A DNA stretch of 64,000 nucleotides, taken from positions 1-64,000 of IMG/VR virus record IMGVR_UViG_3300023313_000001; one strand, 5' to 3'. Position numbers and translations under genes: made by a program. Each line of letters opens with the position of its first letter. Position 1 is the stretch's first letter. The notes below the pieces were generated by a model. That model saw only the letters and a list, made by a program, of their open reading frames with translations. It was not told the origin of the DNA and made no database searches. Positions 10,352 to 14,821 of the stretch are shown piece by piece.

Positions 10352-10807
10352 ATGAAGAACAACTTTGTAGTTGGAATCCTATTATTGGTTCCAATGTATA
10401 CTGTGTCAGCAAATGAAACTAACAAATACTTTGGTGATCGTAGTTGGCAGTGGAACAGTCCTAATGATAACGCAGTAAAGAATCAACAATTGATGATCCG
10501 GTGTGCTGCAAAGCCTCAATCCTGTGCTGGGTTGAATAAACCAAATAGGTCTGGTGGAGGTAATAGTGGAGGGTTAGGACTCGGTTTTGGATTGGCTAGT
10601 GGTCAAAATATTGGCAACGTCGTTAATGTAATTGTCACTGGAGATAACAATGTTGTTACTATTGCTGGTGACCAAACAAATAATGGCGATCAAGCAGTCG
10701 ATATTAACGTCAATGACAATAATATCGATGTGGTTGTAGATGACCATTCCCAAATAATTAATGGGGATGTCACCCCCGCTGTTGAACCATCAGATCCACC
10801 AATGTAA
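10352..10807 (+). CDS. HfaA-like secreted curlin-like protein
   Basis: Signal peptide, Gly-rich linker, IGNVVNVIVTGDNNVV...QTNNGDQ as in HfaA; precedes a CsgG/HfaB gene. Confidence 0.6.
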   Translation: MKNNFVVGILLLVPMYTVSANETNKYFGDRSWQWNSPNDNAVKNQQLMIRCAAKPQSCAGLNKPNRSGGGNSGGLGLGFGLASGQNIGNVVNVIVTGDNNVVTIAGDQTNNGDQAVDINVNDNNIDVVVDDHSQIINGDVTPAVEPSDPPM

Positions 10808-10819
10808 ATAAGGATTAAC

Positions 10820-12136
10820 ATGAAACATATTAGAACTATCCTAGCTATAATTTGTACCATAGCTGTCGTAGGATGTAGTAGTTTTGGTACAATTCACCAT
10901 GGTAAAAATGGATACAGTATAATTAACGGACCGAAGGTTACCCGTAATAATACTCCAGCTACTGTGGGACTAATGTGTGTTGGTAATACCATCAACAATG
11001 CATATCCTGGGAAAAAACGTATTAGAGTATCTATAGGCTCCATCCCAGATTTGACTGGCAAATTTTCAAATAACGACGCAGGGTATAAAGTTACTCAAGG
11101 TGCTGCACTCATGGCCTATTCCGCTCTCCAGAAAATGAAAGCAGTTCAAGTCGTTGAGCGGGCAGACACCAACATATTCCAATTTGAAACTACCTTAGCT
11201 AACCAGCGAATGTTAGGGGATCGAGTTAACTACCGTCTTCCCAATGGCCAGACAATAAACTACAGACCTATATTGAGTGGGAAGGTACTAGGCTCTGCAT
11301 ATTATGTTACTGGAGGCATTACAGAAATTAATTATAATATCTACAGCGGAGGTGGAGAACTAGATGTAGCTTGGTTTGGAGGATCACGTAGGTATGTAAT
11401 GAATATAGCCATGGATCTACGGTTAGTTAATTCTCAAACGTTGGAAGTTGTTTCTGCTCTGACTTTACAAAAGCAAATTATCGGATATGAAACCAAATTA
11501 GGGGTTTTCAAGTTCTTTGGATCTGAGTTAGTAGATCTCAACATAGGAGAAAAGAATGATGAGCCTGTGCAGCTTGGGGTGCGAACTATAATCGAACAGG
11601 GTGTGGCTGAATTGATCGGATCATTGTATAAAATAGATACTGAAAAGTTATTTGACGGATTAGAGGACAAAGGACTATTTGGAAATCAATGGATTACAGA
11701 CCCTAGAACTGTAGCAAATGCATTTTGTCCTAGAATGGACGTGGTCCATGATACTCCTACCTACCCAACACGTAACCACAATCCAGTTAAAAAATCAGGA
11801 TATGTTGGGTCGTGTACCAATTTAAAAACCAAATGTCAATTATGTAACTTGAAAAACCTAGCCAAACAACCATCCAAAAAACGCCCTGGAATATATGTTC
11901 AAATGGCATCTTTTCAAAAACCTGAAGGTTGTTTGAATGAATGGGCTTGTTTAGAAAGTAAACATGGTGATTTATTTAAAAATCAAAATTACACAATAGA
12001 TAGAACATTATCATCCACCGGACGAATTTGGCACGGGTTACTAGTGGGTCCATTTGCTAGCAACAAGAAAGCCAATCAATTTTGCTCTACCAGCAAAAAA
12101 CGTGGGTTAAACTGCTACGTTCGCAATATCAAATAA
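10820..12136 (+). CDS. CsgG/HfaB family outer-membrane lipoprotein with C-terminal SPOR domain
   Basis: Lipobox AVVGC; IPDLTGK, VTQGAALM, VVER, GGITEINYNI.SGG, MDLRLV, EPVQLGVR; C-terminal YVQMASF...LLVGPF...A.QFC. Confidence 0.85.
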   Translation: MKHIRTILAIICTIAVVGCSSFGTIHHGKNGYSIINGPKVTRNNTPATVGLMCVGNTINNAYPGKKRIRVSIGSIPDLTGKFSNNDAGYKVTQGAALMAYSALQKMKAVQVVERADTNIFQFETTLANQRMLGDRVNYRLPNGQTINYRPILSGKVLGSAYYVTGGITEINYNIYSGGGELDVAWFGGSRRYVMNIAMDLRLVNSQTLEVVSALTLQKQIIGYETKLGVFKFFGSELVDLNIGEKNDEPVQLGVRTIIEQGVAELIGSLYKIDTEKLFDGLEDKGLFGNQWITDPRTVANAFCPRMDVVHDTPTYPTRNHNPVKKSGYVGSCTNLKTKCQLCNLKNLAKQPSKKRPGIYVQMASFQKPEGCLNEWACLESKHGDLFKNQNYTIDRTLSSTGRIWHGLLVGPFASNKKANQFCSTSKKRGLNCYVRNIK

Positions 12137-12158
12137 CTTAACTAAAAGGAAACACCCT

Positions 12159-12947
12159 ATGAAAAATCTAGCAATTATATCATTACTAATCTCAACTACA
12201 GCGTTAGCTGATACTCCAAATTTAACGGTTGTCGGCGACTATACTGTCAATTACGATACGACAGTTGATATAACTGAACTGAACGCAGATGTCCTCAATA
12301 GTCAGTTCAATCATGCCAGCGCTCAATCTGCATTAATCAACGTAACACATAACAGAACTCTCGGTAATGTAGATTTAAACGCTACAGCAATTGGGAATAC
12401 AGCAACTGTATCATTGACATCTGTGGACACTGTAACCAATGTTCAGGGCAATCAAGAAGGTGGACAAACAGCATCTACTAATTTCACGTATAATAGATTA
12501 CCCAACTCAGAACTAGTTATCAATACTACTGCAGTTGGAAATAATTTTTCAATTGATACTACAGACGGTGACCTATCAATGCAAAATGTCCAGTTCAATT
12601 ATGACTCTCCAATATCGTCTGCAATTAATGTGACCAATAATAGATTCAGTGGTGGATGGGATCCTGTATTGAATGCGACTGCTATTGGCAGCAATGCTTC
12701 CGTTATCGCATCTGGTGATATTAATGTGTCTAACTTACAAGTGAATATTAACTCTCCAATGTCCTCTTCCGTTAACTTTAGCTATAATACTGGAGCTATT
12801 GGTCCATTGTCGATAAACGCTCAAACTATTGGCAACAGTTTGAACATCAGCAATCCATTAAATACCGATAATTCTGGAAACAATGATAATTCTGGAAACA
12901 ATGATACTTCTGGAAACAATGATAATTCTGAAGATGGTGGTAGTTAG
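12159..12947 (+). CDS. HfaD-like secreted beta-repeat protein
   Basis: Signal peptide; four repeats of (A/T)TA(I/V)GN...Q.N; third gene after HfaA-like and HfaB-like genes. Confidence 0.6.
   Translation: MKNLAIISLLISTTALADTPNLTVVGDYTVNYDTTVDITELNADVLNSQFNHASAQSALINVTHNRTLGNVDLNATAIGNTATVSLTSVDTVTNVQGNQEGGQTASTNFTYNRLPNSELVINTTAVGNNFSIDTTDGDLSMQNVQFNYDSPISSAINVTNNRFSGGWDPVLNATAIGSNASVIASGDINVSNLQVNINSPMSSSVNFSYNTGAIGPLSINAQTIGNSLNISNPLNTDNSGNNDNSGNNDTSGNNDNSEDGGS
12868..12930 (+). repeat. 18-bp tandem repeat encoding DNSGNN x~3.5
   Basis: GATAATTCTGGAAACAAT repeats. Confidence 0.85.
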
Positions 12948-13041
12948 TAATTACACAGTAGTTTAGCACAACTAAATTATAGTTGTGCTAAATAGTGAAT
13001 ACTAGTATCATTTAGTGTCTACCATTATACAGAGTAATAAT

Positions 13042-14033: not shown

Positions 14034-14456
14034 ATGCCTACTATGATCTTAAAATACTGGCCATACCTGCTAGCAGCTGGTGGAGCATTAGTGCTTTTCC
14101 TATACTGGAACGGTCGCAACAATGAATTAGATGATCTTCGAACACAAGTAGCTAATCAAGCTGCAGAGATTGTTATTAAAGATGCTACATACAAAGAAAA
14201 TAAACGCAAGTTGACTGATCAAATTGATCGACAAAATATTGCAATCAACAAAGCTAATGATGATTATACTGAATTAGAACGTCGTACATCAATAGCTGTT
14301 GCAGCATCAAACGCAGAAAATGCTGTACGTGTTACCAAGTTGAAGAAACAGTTAGACCTGCTTGGAAGTATTTCAACCCCACAAACATGTGAGTCTGCAA
14401 TTAATCTATTAGTTGATATAGGAGTAGCCAACAAATGGTCCACCCAGCGAAATTAA
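14034..14456 (+). CDS. putative i-spanin (Rz-like)
   Basis: N-terminal TM, periplasmic coiled coil, Cys near C-terminus; overlaps a lipoprotein gene. Confidence 0.6.
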   Translation: MPTMILKYWPYLLAAGGALVLFLYWNGRNNELDDLRTQVANQAAEIVIKDATYKENKRKLTDQIDRQNIAINKANDDYTELERRTSIAVAASNAENAVRVTKLKKQLDLLGSISTPQTCESAINLLVDIGVANKWSTQRN

Positions 14457-14821
14457 TACTATTGTTATCCTTTGTAACAATGACAGGATGTGCTTCCACT
14501 GGTAAAACTAAATTTATCAACCGGATTGAAACCATCACGGTGTATAAGCCAGTGTATACCCCACCAACAGAACTTAAAAACCTGAAGGTAATCCAACGTC
14601 CAGACTTACAAACGAACCACTTGACTGCAGATGATAAAGCCAATCCTGGATTGGTAGTAAAAACTGTAATTGCGTCAGAGGCCCAACTTAGAACCTATGC
14701 AGAGCAACTAGAGTCTCAAAATGACGCATATCGAAAATTGCTAAGTAAACCAGCTGATCCTGTCCCTGAGACAGAACGTAGTGTGACAACATATGAAAGT
14801 ACCAAACCTATCAAGGATTGA
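14435..14821 (+). CDS. putative o-spanin (Rz1-like lipoprotein)
   Basis: Lipobox TMTGC, Pro-rich; overlaps end of Rz-like gene. Confidence 0.6.
   Translation: MVHPAKLILLLSFVTMTGCASTGKTKFINRIETITVYKPVYTPPTELKNLKVIQRPDLQTNHLTADDKANPGLVVKTVIASEAQLRTYAEQLESQNDAYRKLLSKPADPVPETERSVTTYESTKPIKD

What the first reader, a model, noticed from the sequence alone, without database searches (positions are those of the whole stretch)
10352..12947. Phage-encoded hfaA-hfaB-hfaD-like (holdfast anchor/curli-type) secretion operon with SPOR fusion
Seen: a secreted Asn/Gly-rich beta-repeat protein, a CsgG/HfaB lipoprotein with a C-terminal SPOR-like domain, and a second secreted repeat protein, in the same order as Caulobacter hfaABD. 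Established: CsgG/HfaB pores export amyloid-like subunits, and SPOR binds denuded septal peptidoglycan. Inference: the phage builds an amyloid-like surface structure on infected cells (aggregation, superinfection or grazer shielding), possibly positioned at the septum.
Basis: partly seen in the sequence, partly recalled or inferred. Interest (0 to 1): 0.62.

Follow-up and report, generated by a model that had tools for sequence, protein, structure and literature searches.

The report
Phage-borne holdfast anchor operon hfaABD
A large T4-like phage from a microbial mat carries a complete copy of the three-gene bacterial "holdfast anchor" system, whose outer-membrane pore has gained a cell-wall-binding SPOR domain. 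This suggests the virus remodels how its infected host sticks to surfaces, but the effect on the cell is untested.

Summary
Window 10352-12947 (+) holds three tightly packed genes.

- **ORF1** (151 aa) has a Sec signal and is a distant HfaA homologue (hhalign 97%, E 6e-11).
- **ORF2** (438 aa) is a lipoprotein. It has an HfaB/CsgG domain (NCBIfam HfaB E 5e-71; Foldseek CsgG E 2e-13) and a C-terminal SPOR domain (Pfam 30.4 bits against a cut-off of 21; fold match to the RlpA SPOR domain).
- **ORF3** (262 aa) has a Sec signal and four 48-aa repeats. It is a half-length HfaD homologue (hhalign 94%, E 8e-8) and is predicted to be a beta-solenoid.

The record is a T4-like phage: gp23, gp30.3 and RNA ligase are present. 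The cassette is conserved in at least five other T4-like phage contigs, four of which I examined, with synonymous sites saturated and dN/dS about 0.13-0.22. Its closest cellular relatives are chromosomal hfaABD-like loci of Thiotrichaceae, which have a similar GC content.

The SPOR fusion was found only in the phage-type proteins. None of the roughly 80 bacterial HfaB-like proteins examined carries it, although eight carry an OmpA domain instead.

The molecular reading, a wall-tethered pore that exports two surface beta-solenoid proteins, is well supported. The benefit to the phage (adhesion or aggregation, superinfection exclusion, or lysis) is inference. I found no paper describing a phage hfaABD. 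I class this as a new variant of a known kind.

The parts
10352..10807 (+). hfaA-like gene. Encodes a 151-aa secreted Asn/Gly/Val-rich protein: Sec signal 1-20, a conserved Cys pair (C51, C58), a Gly-rich linker, then an HfaA-type 'AIGN..NV.V.G.NN.V....Q.N' core at about residues 66-126.
   Evidence: NCBIfam HfaA gives E 2.8e-4 and 21.3 bits, below the 50-bit cut-off. Orthologues score better: E 4e-7 and 5e-6. The family HMM hits bona fide HfaA genes upstream of hfaB at E about 1e-9. hhalign of A10 against true HfaA (A9) gives probability 97.1% and E 6.1e-11. Relatives carry Pfam PF27294 HfaA.
10820..12136 (+). hfaB-SPOR gene. Encodes a 438-aa outer-membrane lipoprotein: lipobox Cys19, HfaB/CsgG pore domain at about 30-272, a helical and disordered linker at 273-356, and a SPOR domain at 357-435. 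The C-terminal part holds 8 Cys.
   Evidence: Family matches: Pfam CsgG 4.3e-20 and SPOR 4.9e-7; NCBIfam HfaB 4.7e-71 at 239 bits, below the 300-bit cut-off; phrog_20175 1.5e-54. The AF2 model has mean pLDDT 81.9, and the SPOR part about 95 with beta-alpha-beta-beta-alpha-beta order. Foldseek gives CsgG 4UV2 at E 2e-13 and RlpA SPOR 6I09 at TM 0.71 and rmsd 3.0. The tree places it in a 98* clade with true HfaB.
12159..12947 (+). hfaD-like gene. Encodes a 262-aa secreted protein: Sec signal 1-17, four repeats of about 48 aa with the signature Q...A-x-G-N (residues 45-231, predicted beta-solenoid), and a unique C-terminal (SGNNDN)x4 tail.
   Evidence: The family HMM hits the gene directly downstream of hfaB in Thiotrichaceae at E 1e-32 to 1e-41 and CcrColossus gp243 at 2e-7. 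hhalign of A4 against bona fide HfaD (A5) gives probability 94.4% and E 8.4e-8. Relatives carry Pfam PF27277 HfaD. NCBIfam HfaD gives no hit. AF2 pLDDT exceeds 90 over residues 45-231, all beta. Fold matches are weak: CsgA fibril Z 5.9 and FapC E 2.7e-4. Repeats are shown.
12961..12993 (+). Stem-loop of 14 bp directly after the ORF3 stop codon. It is the likely 3' boundary of the cassette transcript (a terminator-like or RNA-stabilising hairpin with no clear U-run).
   Evidence: RNA fold gives -18.6 kcal/mol, z = -4.19, and 0 of 200 shuffles fold as well. Sequence shown.

Best explanation
This is a complete holdfast-anchor module (hfaA-hfaB-hfaD) carried as an auxiliary operon by a T4-like jumbo phage. 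The host is probably a mat-forming member of the Thiotrichaceae.

Proposed mechanism in the infected cell:
1. All three products are exported by Sec.
2. ORF2 is lipidated and sent to the outer membrane. There its CsgG-type domain assembles into an oligomeric pore. Its phage-specific C-terminal SPOR domain, held on a linker of about 85 residues, ties the pore to peptidoglycan. The likely target is denuded glycan strands, which are enriched at septa and new poles.
3. The pore exports ORF1 (HfaA-like) and ORF3 (HfaD-like, a four-repeat beta-solenoid) to the cell surface.
4. On the surface the two co-assemble into a stable, amyloid-like anchor that binds and holds surface polysaccharide.

Proposed benefit to the phage: the infected cell stays attached or aggregated inside the mat, next to susceptible kin. 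A coated surface that excludes other phages is a second possibility.

What is shown and what is inferred:
- Shown: gene content, homology, export signals, folds, conservation in phages, and the phage-restricted SPOR fusion.
- Inferred from Caulobacter HfaABD and from SPOR biology: pore assembly, export of ORF1 and ORF3, wall tethering and localisation.
- Speculative: the ecological pay-off.

The confidence of 0.65 is for the molecular reading (a wall-tethered HfaB-type pore exporting two surface subunits) with adhesion or aggregation as the leading pay-off. The molecular part alone I put at about 0.8.
For: Homology of all three proteins to HfaA, HfaB and HfaD, in the same order.

ORF2 sits inside a 98* clade that holds the true alphaproteobacterial HfaB proteins. 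That clade is separate from the OmpA-fused CsgG/HfaB-family proteins, whose neighbouring genes gave no HfaA or HfaD hits.

Structure:
- CsgG fold and SPOR fold for ORF2.
- A confident beta-solenoid for ORF3.
- Signal peptide or lipobox on all three proteins.

Conservation in phages:
- The whole cassette recurs in T4-like contigs L005, L006/L092, L007 and L088.
- Divergence is similar to that of the neighbouring gp30.3 gene. dS is saturated and dN/dS is 0.13-0.22 where it can be computed.
- This points to long-term purifying selection on pore and substrates alike.

Likely host:
- The closest cellular loci are chromosomal, next to trmD, rimM and recO, in Thiotrichaceae MAGs of GC 37-41% against 38% for the window.
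- 11 of 81 genomes of that family carry the ORF3 family.
- The phage comes from a microbial-mat metagenome, where it is deeply covered.

Wall tethering recurs in this family: 8 of 85 HfaB-like proteins carry an OmpA domain.

The ORF1-ORF3 complex prediction gave weak support: ipSAE 0.33 against a best control of 0.00, and partner pLDDT 45-48. That mark was reached by 58 of 80 solved complexes and 2 of 110 mismatches, but passes at or under 0.60 are more often wrong than right.

Roles of HfaA, HfaB and HfaD in Caulobacter are taken from PMC6707917.
Against: - ORF1 and ORF3 score below the curated NCBIfam cut-offs (21 bits against 50, and no hit). ORF2 scores 239 bits against 300.
- ORF3 aligns only with the C-terminal half of HfaD (4 repeats against 8).
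- Both flanking proteins are biased repeat proteins, which can inflate profile scores.
- No holdfast polysaccharide export gene (Poly_export) was found in the 229-kb record. Any anchored polymer would therefore have to come from the host.
- There is no expression data. The one RNA run from the sample is tiny and holds none of the stretch.
- No promoter could be assigned.
- The host is inferred, not shown.
- Nothing tested here tells adhesion apart from exclusion or lysis roles.
Confidence: 0.65

Rival explanations
1. Lysis or envelope-permeabilisation device. The HfaB-SPOR pore would be used as an outer-membrane channel that helps time or complete lysis, as proposed for the CsgG/CsgF pores of phage Melnitz. 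ORF1 and ORF3 would act as plugs or regulators rather than as surface anchors.
For: A pinholin or secretin-like lysis role has been proposed for phage CsgGF (PMC9004378). A spanin-like i/o pair lies about 1.1 kb downstream at 14034-14821, with weak PHROG Rz-like hits. T4-type spanin genes also lie a few kb downstream of the cassette in L007 and L088. The SPOR domain places the pore on the wall, which lysis enzymes attack.
Against: Both exported repeat proteins are conserved with the pore across divergent phages under purifying selection. That fits a secretion system with cargo better than a bare channel. In T4-like genomes spanin genes are not part of a lysis cassette, so their proximity says little. 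The cassette also sits in different neighbourhoods in different phages. A CsgG-type channel lies in the outer membrane and cannot depolarise the inner membrane.
Confidence: 0.12
2. Superinfection exclusion or receptor masking. The exported HfaA/HfaD-like layer, or the pore itself, would change or cover the cell surface or pole so that other phages, or the phage's own progeny, cannot adsorb to the infected cell.
For: The cassette lies among non-structural, early-type genes (gp30.3, RNA ligase, nucleases). That is typical of host-takeover or exclusion morons. Related cassettes occur in Caulobacter and Brevundimonas jumbo phages, which are described as adsorbing at the cell pole (my own knowledge). 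The products are surface-exposed by homology.
Against: There is no direct evidence. The module keeps the full architecture of an anchor that binds polysaccharide, which is more than masking would need. This reading overlaps with the best explanation at the molecular level and differs only in the pay-off.
Confidence: 0.15
3. Passenger DNA. The cassette would be a recently captured host operon with no role in the phage life cycle.
For: The closest cellular homologues are host-like Thiotrichaceae loci of similar GC content. The cassette occupies variable positions among phages.
Against: All three ORFs are intact in at least five divergent phage contigs, with saturated dS and dN/dS of 0.13-0.22. 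Divergence matches that of the neighbouring phage gene gp30.3. The SPOR fusion is specific to the phage lineage and is absent from the 78 bacterial HfaB-like proteins examined. The phage proteins are only 42-47% identical to the closest bacterial ones, so capture was not recent.
Confidence: 0.04

Closest known systems
Caulobacter crescentus holdfast anchor HfaA-HfaB-HfaD (PMC6707917)
   Same: Three genes in the same order. A small secreted HfaA with the 'AIGN..NV.V.G..N.V...Q.N' core. A CsgG-like lipoprotein HfaB. A secreted HfaD built of repeats of about 48 aa with a Q...A-x-G-N signature. ORF2 groups with true HfaB in a 98* clade.
   Different: ORF2 carries an extra C-terminal SPOR domain. 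ORF3 has 4 repeats rather than 8. All three proteins score below the NCBIfam equivalog cut-offs. The genes are encoded by a virus. No hfs polysaccharide export gene (Poly_export) was found in the phage record.
Chromosomal hfaABD-like loci of Thiotrichaceae/Cocleimonas MAGs (L008, L009, L010, L015)
   Same: These are the closest cellular relatives of all three proteins. ORF2 is 42-47% identical, the ORF3-family HMM scores E 1e-32 to 1e-41, and the ORF1-family HMM scores E 1e-13 to 1e-19. They share the order, a short four-repeat HfaD and similar GC content.
   Different: The bacterial HfaB proteins are 278-280 aa and have no SPOR domain. The loci lie among housekeeping genes.
HfaB/CsgG-like cassettes of Caulobacter and Brevundimonas jumbo siphophages (CcrColossus gp241-243, CcrPW, Domovoi and others; phrog_20175)
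   Same: A phage-borne HfaB homologue (39-44% identity) flanked by a small protein upstream and an HfaD-like repeat protein downstream. gp243 scores NCBIfam HfaD E 1.5e-5 and ORF3-family HMM 2e-7.
   Different: They belong to a different phage lineage (Dolichocephalovirinae) and have high GC content and no SPOR domain. The upstream protein shows no detectable HfaA similarity. They branch outside the clade of T4-like phages plus Thiotrichaceae. The records annotate them only as a CsgG-like protein, a putative HfaB 'transcription activator' or hypothetical proteins.
Curli-type csgF-csgG modules of pelagimyophages and Methylophilales phage Melnitz (PMC7029224, PMC9004378)
   Same: T4-like marine phages carrying a CsgG-family outer-membrane pore with repeat proteins next to it. 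Their function is unknown, with 'sibling capture' and lysis timing proposed. Those phages also carry a two-piece tmRNA, as this window does.
   Different: Those are true curli-type modules (CsgF present, curlin-repeat proteins), are only 29% identical over part of the domain, and serve as the distant outgroup in the tree. They have no HfaA, HfaD or SPOR.
OmpA-fused CsgG/HfaB-family lipoproteins of Beta- and Alphaproteobacteria (e.g. Rhodoferax, Castellaniella, Variovorax)
   Same: A CsgG/HfaB pore domain followed by a C-terminal peptidoglycan-binding domain, so wall tethering of the pore recurs.
   Different: The domain is OmpA-like (PF00691), not SPOR. The proteins form a separate clade, and no HfaA or HfaD hits were found among their neighbours.

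Membership tests
HfaB (NCBIfam NF037935) within the CsgG family (PF03783) | Pfam CsgG domain above the gathering score, and a CsgG fold | tested here: met
   72.4 bits against a 20.8 cut-off. Foldseek to CsgG 4UV2 gives E 2e-13 and target TM 0.63.
HfaB (NCBIfam NF037935) within the CsgG family (PF03783) | Score above the curated equivalog cut-off (300 bits) | tested here: not met
   239.1 bits, E 4.7e-71, covering model positions 3-263 of 264. The chromosomal Thiotrichaceae copies also fall below the cut-off, at 182-198 bits.
HfaB (NCBIfam NF037935) within the CsgG family (PF03783) | N-terminal lipoprotein signal with a lipobox cysteine | tested here: met
   AVVGC19|SS. C19 is at least 90% conserved in 85 homologues. 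This was judged by inspection, with no predictor run.
HfaB (NCBIfam NF037935) within the CsgG family (PF03783) | Groups phylogenetically with holdfast HfaB rather than with other CsgG-family clades | tested here: met
   A 98* clade (SH-aLRT, quick tree) contains this protein, the other phage sequences, the Thiotrichaceae sequences and the true alphaproteobacterial HfaB proteins.
HfaB (NCBIfam NF037935) within the CsgG family (PF03783) | Flanked by hfaA upstream and hfaD downstream | tested here: met
HfaB (NCBIfam NF037935) within the CsgG family (PF03783) | Forms an outer-membrane pore required for surface display of HfaA and HfaD | not testable with these tools
   This is known for Caulobacter only (PMC6707917).
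HfaA (NCBIfam NF037934 / Pfam PF27294) | Score above the curated cut-off (50 bits) | tested here: not met
   21.3 bits, E 2.8e-4, covering only the C-terminal core. PF27294 is not in the local Pfam library. It is recorded for relatives P0142, P0151 and P0152.
HfaA (NCBIfam NF037934 / Pfam PF27294) | Profile-level homology to bona fide HfaA | tested here: met
   hhalign gives probability 97.1% and E 6.1e-11 over 59 columns. The phage-family HMM hits HfaA proteins that pass NF037934 (L059, L083) at E about 1e-9.
HfaA (NCBIfam NF037934 / Pfam PF27294) | Heat- and SDS-resistant multimers that depend on HfaD | not testable with these tools
   The ORF1-ORF3 complex prediction gave only weak support (0.33 against 0.00).
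HfaD (NCBIfam NF037936 / Pfam PF27277) | Score above the curated cut-off (100 bits) | tested here: not met
   No hit even at E 10. PF27277 is not in the local library, but it is recorded for many family members.
HfaD (NCBIfam NF037936 / Pfam PF27277) | Profile-level homology and the same repeat design | tested here: met
   hhalign gives probability 94.4% and E 8.4e-8 to the C-terminal part of HfaD (about 160 columns, 154 aligned). Both families have a 46-50-aa period with Q...A-x-G-N. ORF3 has 4 repeats (Q49, Q96, Q145, Q194). True HfaD has 8 repeats.
SPOR domain (PF05036) | Pfam gathering score and the beta-alpha-beta-beta-alpha-beta fold | tested here: met
   - Pfam: 30.4 bits against 21.
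- AF2: pLDDT about 95 with the matching order of elements.
- Foldseek: RlpA SPOR 6I09 at target TM 0.71 and rmsd 3.0, and CwlC 1X60.
- Whole-library phmmer: 306 hits. Seven of the ten I scanned have SPOR as their only Pfam family, two of them with 2-3 copies.
- A SPOR HMM built from 316 segments scores E 1.5e-24.
SPOR domain (PF05036) | Binds denuded peptidoglycan and localises to septa | not testable with these tools
   The motifs YVQMASF and W..LLVGP resemble the glycan-binding face of FtsN-type SPOR domains as I recall it. That is a lead from memory, not a test.
Curli system (CsgA/B/E/F/G) | Curlin-repeat subunits and the CsgE and CsgF accessory proteins | tested here: not met
   ORF1 and ORF3 gave no curlin-repeat hit at E up to 1, and no CsgF or CsgE hit appeared among the neighbours I scanned. 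It is therefore not a curli operon, although the pore belongs to the same superfamily.

The most novel reading that the evidence does not exclude
T4-like phages of mat-forming sulfur bacteria carry a self-sufficient holdfast-anchor module that they inherit vertically. Its pore has swapped host-specific polar targeting for a generic SPOR 'address' on septal or polar peptidoglycan. The virus would then actively control whether and where its host sticks, which would be viral manipulation of bacterial sessility. In the tree the Thiotrichaceae HfaB clade sits among the phage sequences. This leaves open that phages moved the hfaABD adhesion module between Alpha- and Gammaproteobacteria.
Probability: 0.25. 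Interest if true: 0.8.

Novelty: new variant of a known kind. Interest (0 to 1): 0.58.

Why it matters
Holdfast anchors fix bacteria to surfaces with an exceptionally strong adhesive. They have been studied as a chromosomal trait of stalked Alphaproteobacteria. This finding shows three things:

- The whole anchor (pore plus both exported subunits) is kept under selection in several T4-like phages.
- A Gammaproteobacterial family (Thiotrichaceae) has the same module.
- The phage version has acquired a SPOR domain that no cellular HfaB examined here has.

If the module is functional, a virus changes the attachment or aggregation of its host inside a microbial mat. That bears on phage transmission in biofilms and on the unexplained CsgG-type pores already reported in marine phages. 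The SPOR fusion also offers a testable idea for how a CsgG-type pore can be positioned in the envelope without host-specific partners.

Tried and rejected
Searches that found nothing:
- Megablast and blastn of the cassette and of neighbouring genes against GenBank phages gave no match, so no close sequenced relative is available.
- The Pfam HfaA and HfaD models (PF27294, PF27277) are not in the local library.
- NCBIfam HfaD finds nothing in the record.
- The T4 late promoter motif TATAAATA is absent near the cassette and is not enriched in the window. The sigma-70 promoter and terminator scans did not exceed the shuffles. Expression timing could therefore not be assigned.
- phmmer of the SPOR region against PDB sequences gave no hit. 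The fold search was needed instead.
- Literature searches for phage hfaABD returned nothing. HfaA + HfaD + bacteriophage gave 0 papers. HfaB + phage gave only host papers. The CcrColossus genome paper does not mention the genes.

Weak or limited results:
- Pairwise BLASTP of ORF1 against the CcrColossus and Domovoi upstream proteins showed no significant similarity.
- Fold searches with the ORF3 model gave only weak generic beta-solenoid matches (best Z 5.9, TM at most 0.21). No specific fold family is claimed.
- Iterative HMM search with the ORF3 family began to pick up HfaA-like proteins as well, which is repeat drift. The homology claim therefore rests on the non-iterated HMM and on hhalign.
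- Laying reads showed only that the source run holds the stretch at high depth. The RNA run from the same sample held none of it, so there is no evidence on expression either way.
- The ESM Atlas search gave only scores below 0.9, which count as leads.

Tested and rejected:
- A virion-part reading is rejected because of the export signals and the neighbouring early-type genes.
- ORF3's weak PHROG 'virion structural protein' hit (E 3e-4) covers a single repeat and is taken as compositional.


Full report
**What is there**

On the + strand of the window lie three close-packed ORFs: 10352-10807 (151 aa), 10820-12136 (438 aa) and 12159-12947 (262 aa). Gaps of 12 and 22 nt separate them. Each start is preceded by a GGAG or AAGGA ribosome-binding site. 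A 14-bp stem-loop lies directly after the third stop codon (-18.6 kcal/mol, z -4.2). ORF1 starts 2 nt after the stop of a gp30.3 homologue (Pfam Phage_30_3, 1.7e-57), so the cassette is probably read through from upstream. No promoter could be assigned.

**It is a phage**

- The window is bases 1-64000 of a 229.5-kb IMG/VR virus record that CheckV estimates at 65% complete.
- The record encodes a T4-type gp23 major capsid protein (2.7e-96).
- The window holds gp30.3, a T4 RNA ligase/tail-fibre attachment homologue, homing-type nucleases, 19 tRNAs and a permuted tmRNA.
- No close relative exists among 50,697 GenBank phage records.
- The stretch is held at high depth in one microbial-mat metagenome run.

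**ORF2**

- The N-terminus has a lipobox (AVVGC19|SS), and C19 is at least 90% conserved among 85 homologues.
- Residues 14-272 match NCBIfam holdfast_HfaB end to end (E 4.7e-71, 239 bits, below the 300-bit equivalog cut-off). The match to E. coli-type CsgG is far weaker (1.3e-14).
- Pfam CsgG and SPOR (residues 357-435) both pass their gathering scores.
- An AlphaFold2 model built from 53 sequences has mean pLDDT 81.9. The last 100 residues have pLDDT of about 95 and the beta-alpha-beta-beta-alpha-beta order of a SPOR domain.
- Foldseek returns CsgG structures (E 2e-13). For the C-terminal part it returns the SPOR domains of P. aeruginosa RlpA bound to denuded glycan (6I09, target TM 0.71, rmsd 3.0) and of B. 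subtilis CwlC.
- A phmmer search of the last 139 residues against 1.84 billion representatives gave 306 hits. Seven of the ten I scanned have SPOR as their only Pfam family, two of them with 2-3 copies.
- A SPOR HMM built from 316 such segments scores ORF2 at E 1.5e-24.

**ORF1**

- It has a Sec-type N-terminus with an invariant A|NE site, two conserved cysteines, a Gly-rich stretch and an Asn/Val/Gly-rich core.
- NCBIfam HfaA matches only weakly (E 2.8e-4, 21 bits against a 50-bit cut-off). Orthologues in related phages score better (4e-7, 5e-6).
- An HMM of four phage orthologues hits the ORF directly upstream of hfaB in Thiotrichaceae (E 1e-13 to 1e-19). It also hits the same position in Micropepsaceae, Caulobacteraceae and Hyphomonadaceae (E 1e-5 to 1e-9), including proteins that pass the NCBIfam HfaA cut-off.
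- hhalign of the enlarged family against true HfaA gives probability 97.1% and E 6e-11. The aligned core is 'AIGN..NV.V.G..N.V...Q.N'.
- Close relatives carry the newer Pfam HfaA model PF27294 in precomputed annotation.

**ORF3**

- It has a Sec-type N-terminus and is 18% Asn. It contains four repeats of 47-50 aa with the signature Q...A-x-G-N (Q49, Q96, Q145, Q194).
- Its tail, (SGNNDN)x4, comes from an 18-nt tandem repeat that the homologues lack.
- The family HMM hits the ORF directly downstream of hfaB in Thiotrichaceae (E 1e-32 to 1e-41) and CcrColossus gp243 (2e-7).
- The NCBIfam HfaD model does not see ORF3.
- hhalign of the family against eight bona fide HfaD proteins, two of which I verified against NF037936, gives probability 94.4% and E 8.4e-8 over the C-terminal part of HfaD (about 160 columns, 154 aligned).
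- True HfaD shows the same period and signature, but with eight repeats.
- Many family members carry Pfam HfaD PF27277.
- The AF2 model is an all-beta solenoid with pLDDT above 90 over residues 45-231.
- Fold matches are weak and generic. The best are the functional amyloids CsgA (Z 5.9) and FapC (Foldseek E 2.7e-4, TM at most 0.21), followed by beta-helical adhesins. I make no claim beyond 'beta-solenoid'.

**Relatives and evolution**

- The same three genes occur in the T4-like contigs L005 (IMG/VR, 61.5 kb), L006/L092 (one phage, syntenic with the window from an ion-channel-like gene to RNA ligase), L007 and L088.
- L005, L006/L092 and L007 have the SPOR-type C-terminus. L088 does not.
- Between the window and L006, the three proteins are 63%, 75% and 56% identical, against 73% for gp30.3. 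Synonymous sites are saturated, and dN/dS is 0.13-0.22 where it can be computed. The cassette has therefore been kept by selection and has diverged along with the phage.
- In a tree of 100 HfaB-domain sequences (quick IQ-TREE, SH-aLRT), ORF2 lies in a 97* clade of T4-like phage sequences plus Thiotrichaceae. That clade joins the true alphaproteobacterial HfaB proteins (99*) and the Caulobacter and Brevundimonas phage copies in a 98* clade. This larger clade is separate from the OmpA-fused CsgG/HfaB-family proteins.
- The Thiotrichaceae form one 100* subclade placed among phage sequences, but only through branches with 83-86 support. The direction of transfer is therefore open.
- The Thiotrichaceae loci are chromosomal, next to trmD, rimM, recO and a cytochrome c peroxidase gene. 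Their GC content is 37-41% against 38% for the window.
- 11 of 81 genomes sampled from that family have the ORF3 family.
- These points make a Thiotrichaceae host plausible, but they do not show it.

**The SPOR fusion**

- Among 85 HfaB-like proteins, all have a CsgG domain, eight have an OmpA domain and three pass Pfam SPOR.
- With HMMs built from the phage C-terminus and from general SPOR segments, only the phage proteins (window, L005, L006, L007) score. None of the 78 bacterial proteins does.
- In the whole-library search, only a handful of 50%-identity clusters are HfaB/CsgG-SPOR fusions: P0003, P0008, P0009, P0155 and P0175.
- One further case is independent: a canonical CsgG-SPOR next to csgF (P0158), on short contigs of unknown origin.
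- Wall tethering of this pore family is thus recurrent (OmpA in bacteria). Tethering through SPOR is rare, and in this sample it is linked to phages.

**Mechanism**

[quoted passage not shown] HfaA forms heat- and SDS-resistant multimers that depend on HfaD, and the complex anchors the holdfast polysaccharide (PMC6707917). I read the cassette in the same way: a wall-tethered outer-membrane pore that exports two beta-solenoid subunits, which assemble on the surface.

A complex prediction for mature ORF3 and ORF1 gave only weak support. The ipSAE was 0.33 against a best control of 0.00. The runs agreed in at least 79% of contacts, and the partner pLDDT was 45-48. That mark was reached by 58 of 80 solved complexes and 2 of 110 mismatches, but passes at or under 0.60 are more often wrong than right.

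The record has no polysaccharide export gene, so any anchored polymer would be the host's. The SPOR domain may give the pore a generic address, such as the septum or new pole, or any denuded glycan. This is inferred from what is known of SPOR domains in general.

The pay-off for the phage is not determined by anything tested here. Possibilities are keeping the infected cell attached among susceptible kin, 'sibling capture' as proposed for pelagimyophage curli genes (PMC7029224), exclusion of other phages, or a role in lysis as proposed for Melnitz (PMC9004378).

**Comparison with what is known, and novelty**

- Phage-borne CsgG-family genes are known. Curli-type csgF-csgG modules occur in pelagimyophages and in Melnitz.
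- HfaB-like genes are annotated in Caulobacter and Brevundimonas jumbo phages, and a PHROG exists for them.
- I found no paper describing a complete phage hfaA-hfaB-hfaD set, its presence in T4-like phages or in Thiotrichaceae, or the SPOR fusion. The library does not cover all journals.
- I therefore class it as a new variant of a known kind. The molecular identity is solid, the function in infection is open, and the interest is moderate to fairly high.

Noticed in passing
window 50655-51024 (+): Phage-encoded permuted (two-piece) tmRNA of the alphaproteobacterial type. Rfam tmRNA_permuted scores 114.6 bits, and ARAGORN gives the tag ANDNFFATAIAA. The same oddity is reported in Melnitz and the pelagimyophages, which also carry CsgG-type pores.
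   Followed up: partly
window 640-717 (+): A tRNA with a CTA anticodon (amber-suppressor type, which ARAGORN calls tRNA-Pyl). It stands apart from the main tRNA cluster of 18 genes at 24.5-50.5 kb. I did not examine whether the phage recodes TAG.
   Followed up: no
window 5095-6117 (+); L092 1-502: A 340-aa protein with PHROG hits to K+ channel-like families. The syntenic gene in the related phage contig L092 carries ligand-gated channel and ion-transport Pfam domains (SBP_bac_3, Lig_chan, Ion_trans_2). This may be a phage-encoded glutamate-receptor-like channel.
   Followed up: no
window 14034-14456 and 14435-14821 (+): An overlapping gene pair that resembles i-spanin and o-spanin. The first has an N-terminal membrane helix followed by a coiled coil. 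The second has a lipobox (VTMTGC). PHROG Rz-like hits are weak (E 0.003-0.06). The pair lies 1.1 kb downstream of the cassette.
   Followed up: partly
window 12842-12931 (+): An 18-nt tandem repeat (4 copies) encodes a (SGNNDN)x4 tail on ORF3. All homologues lack it, so it looks like a recent slippage expansion.
   Followed up: partly
L093 553-2481; L094 370-2298: An independent fusion of a canonical CsgG (Pfam 5.9e-57) to a C-terminal SPOR domain, with csgF directly upstream. It lies on 2.8-2.9-kb metagenome contigs of unknown origin.
   Followed up: partly
L084 3881-4747 and 4744-5862: Two tandem hfaB paralogues in one bacterial MAG contig, both on long branches next to the alphaproteobacterial HfaB clade.
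   Followed up: no
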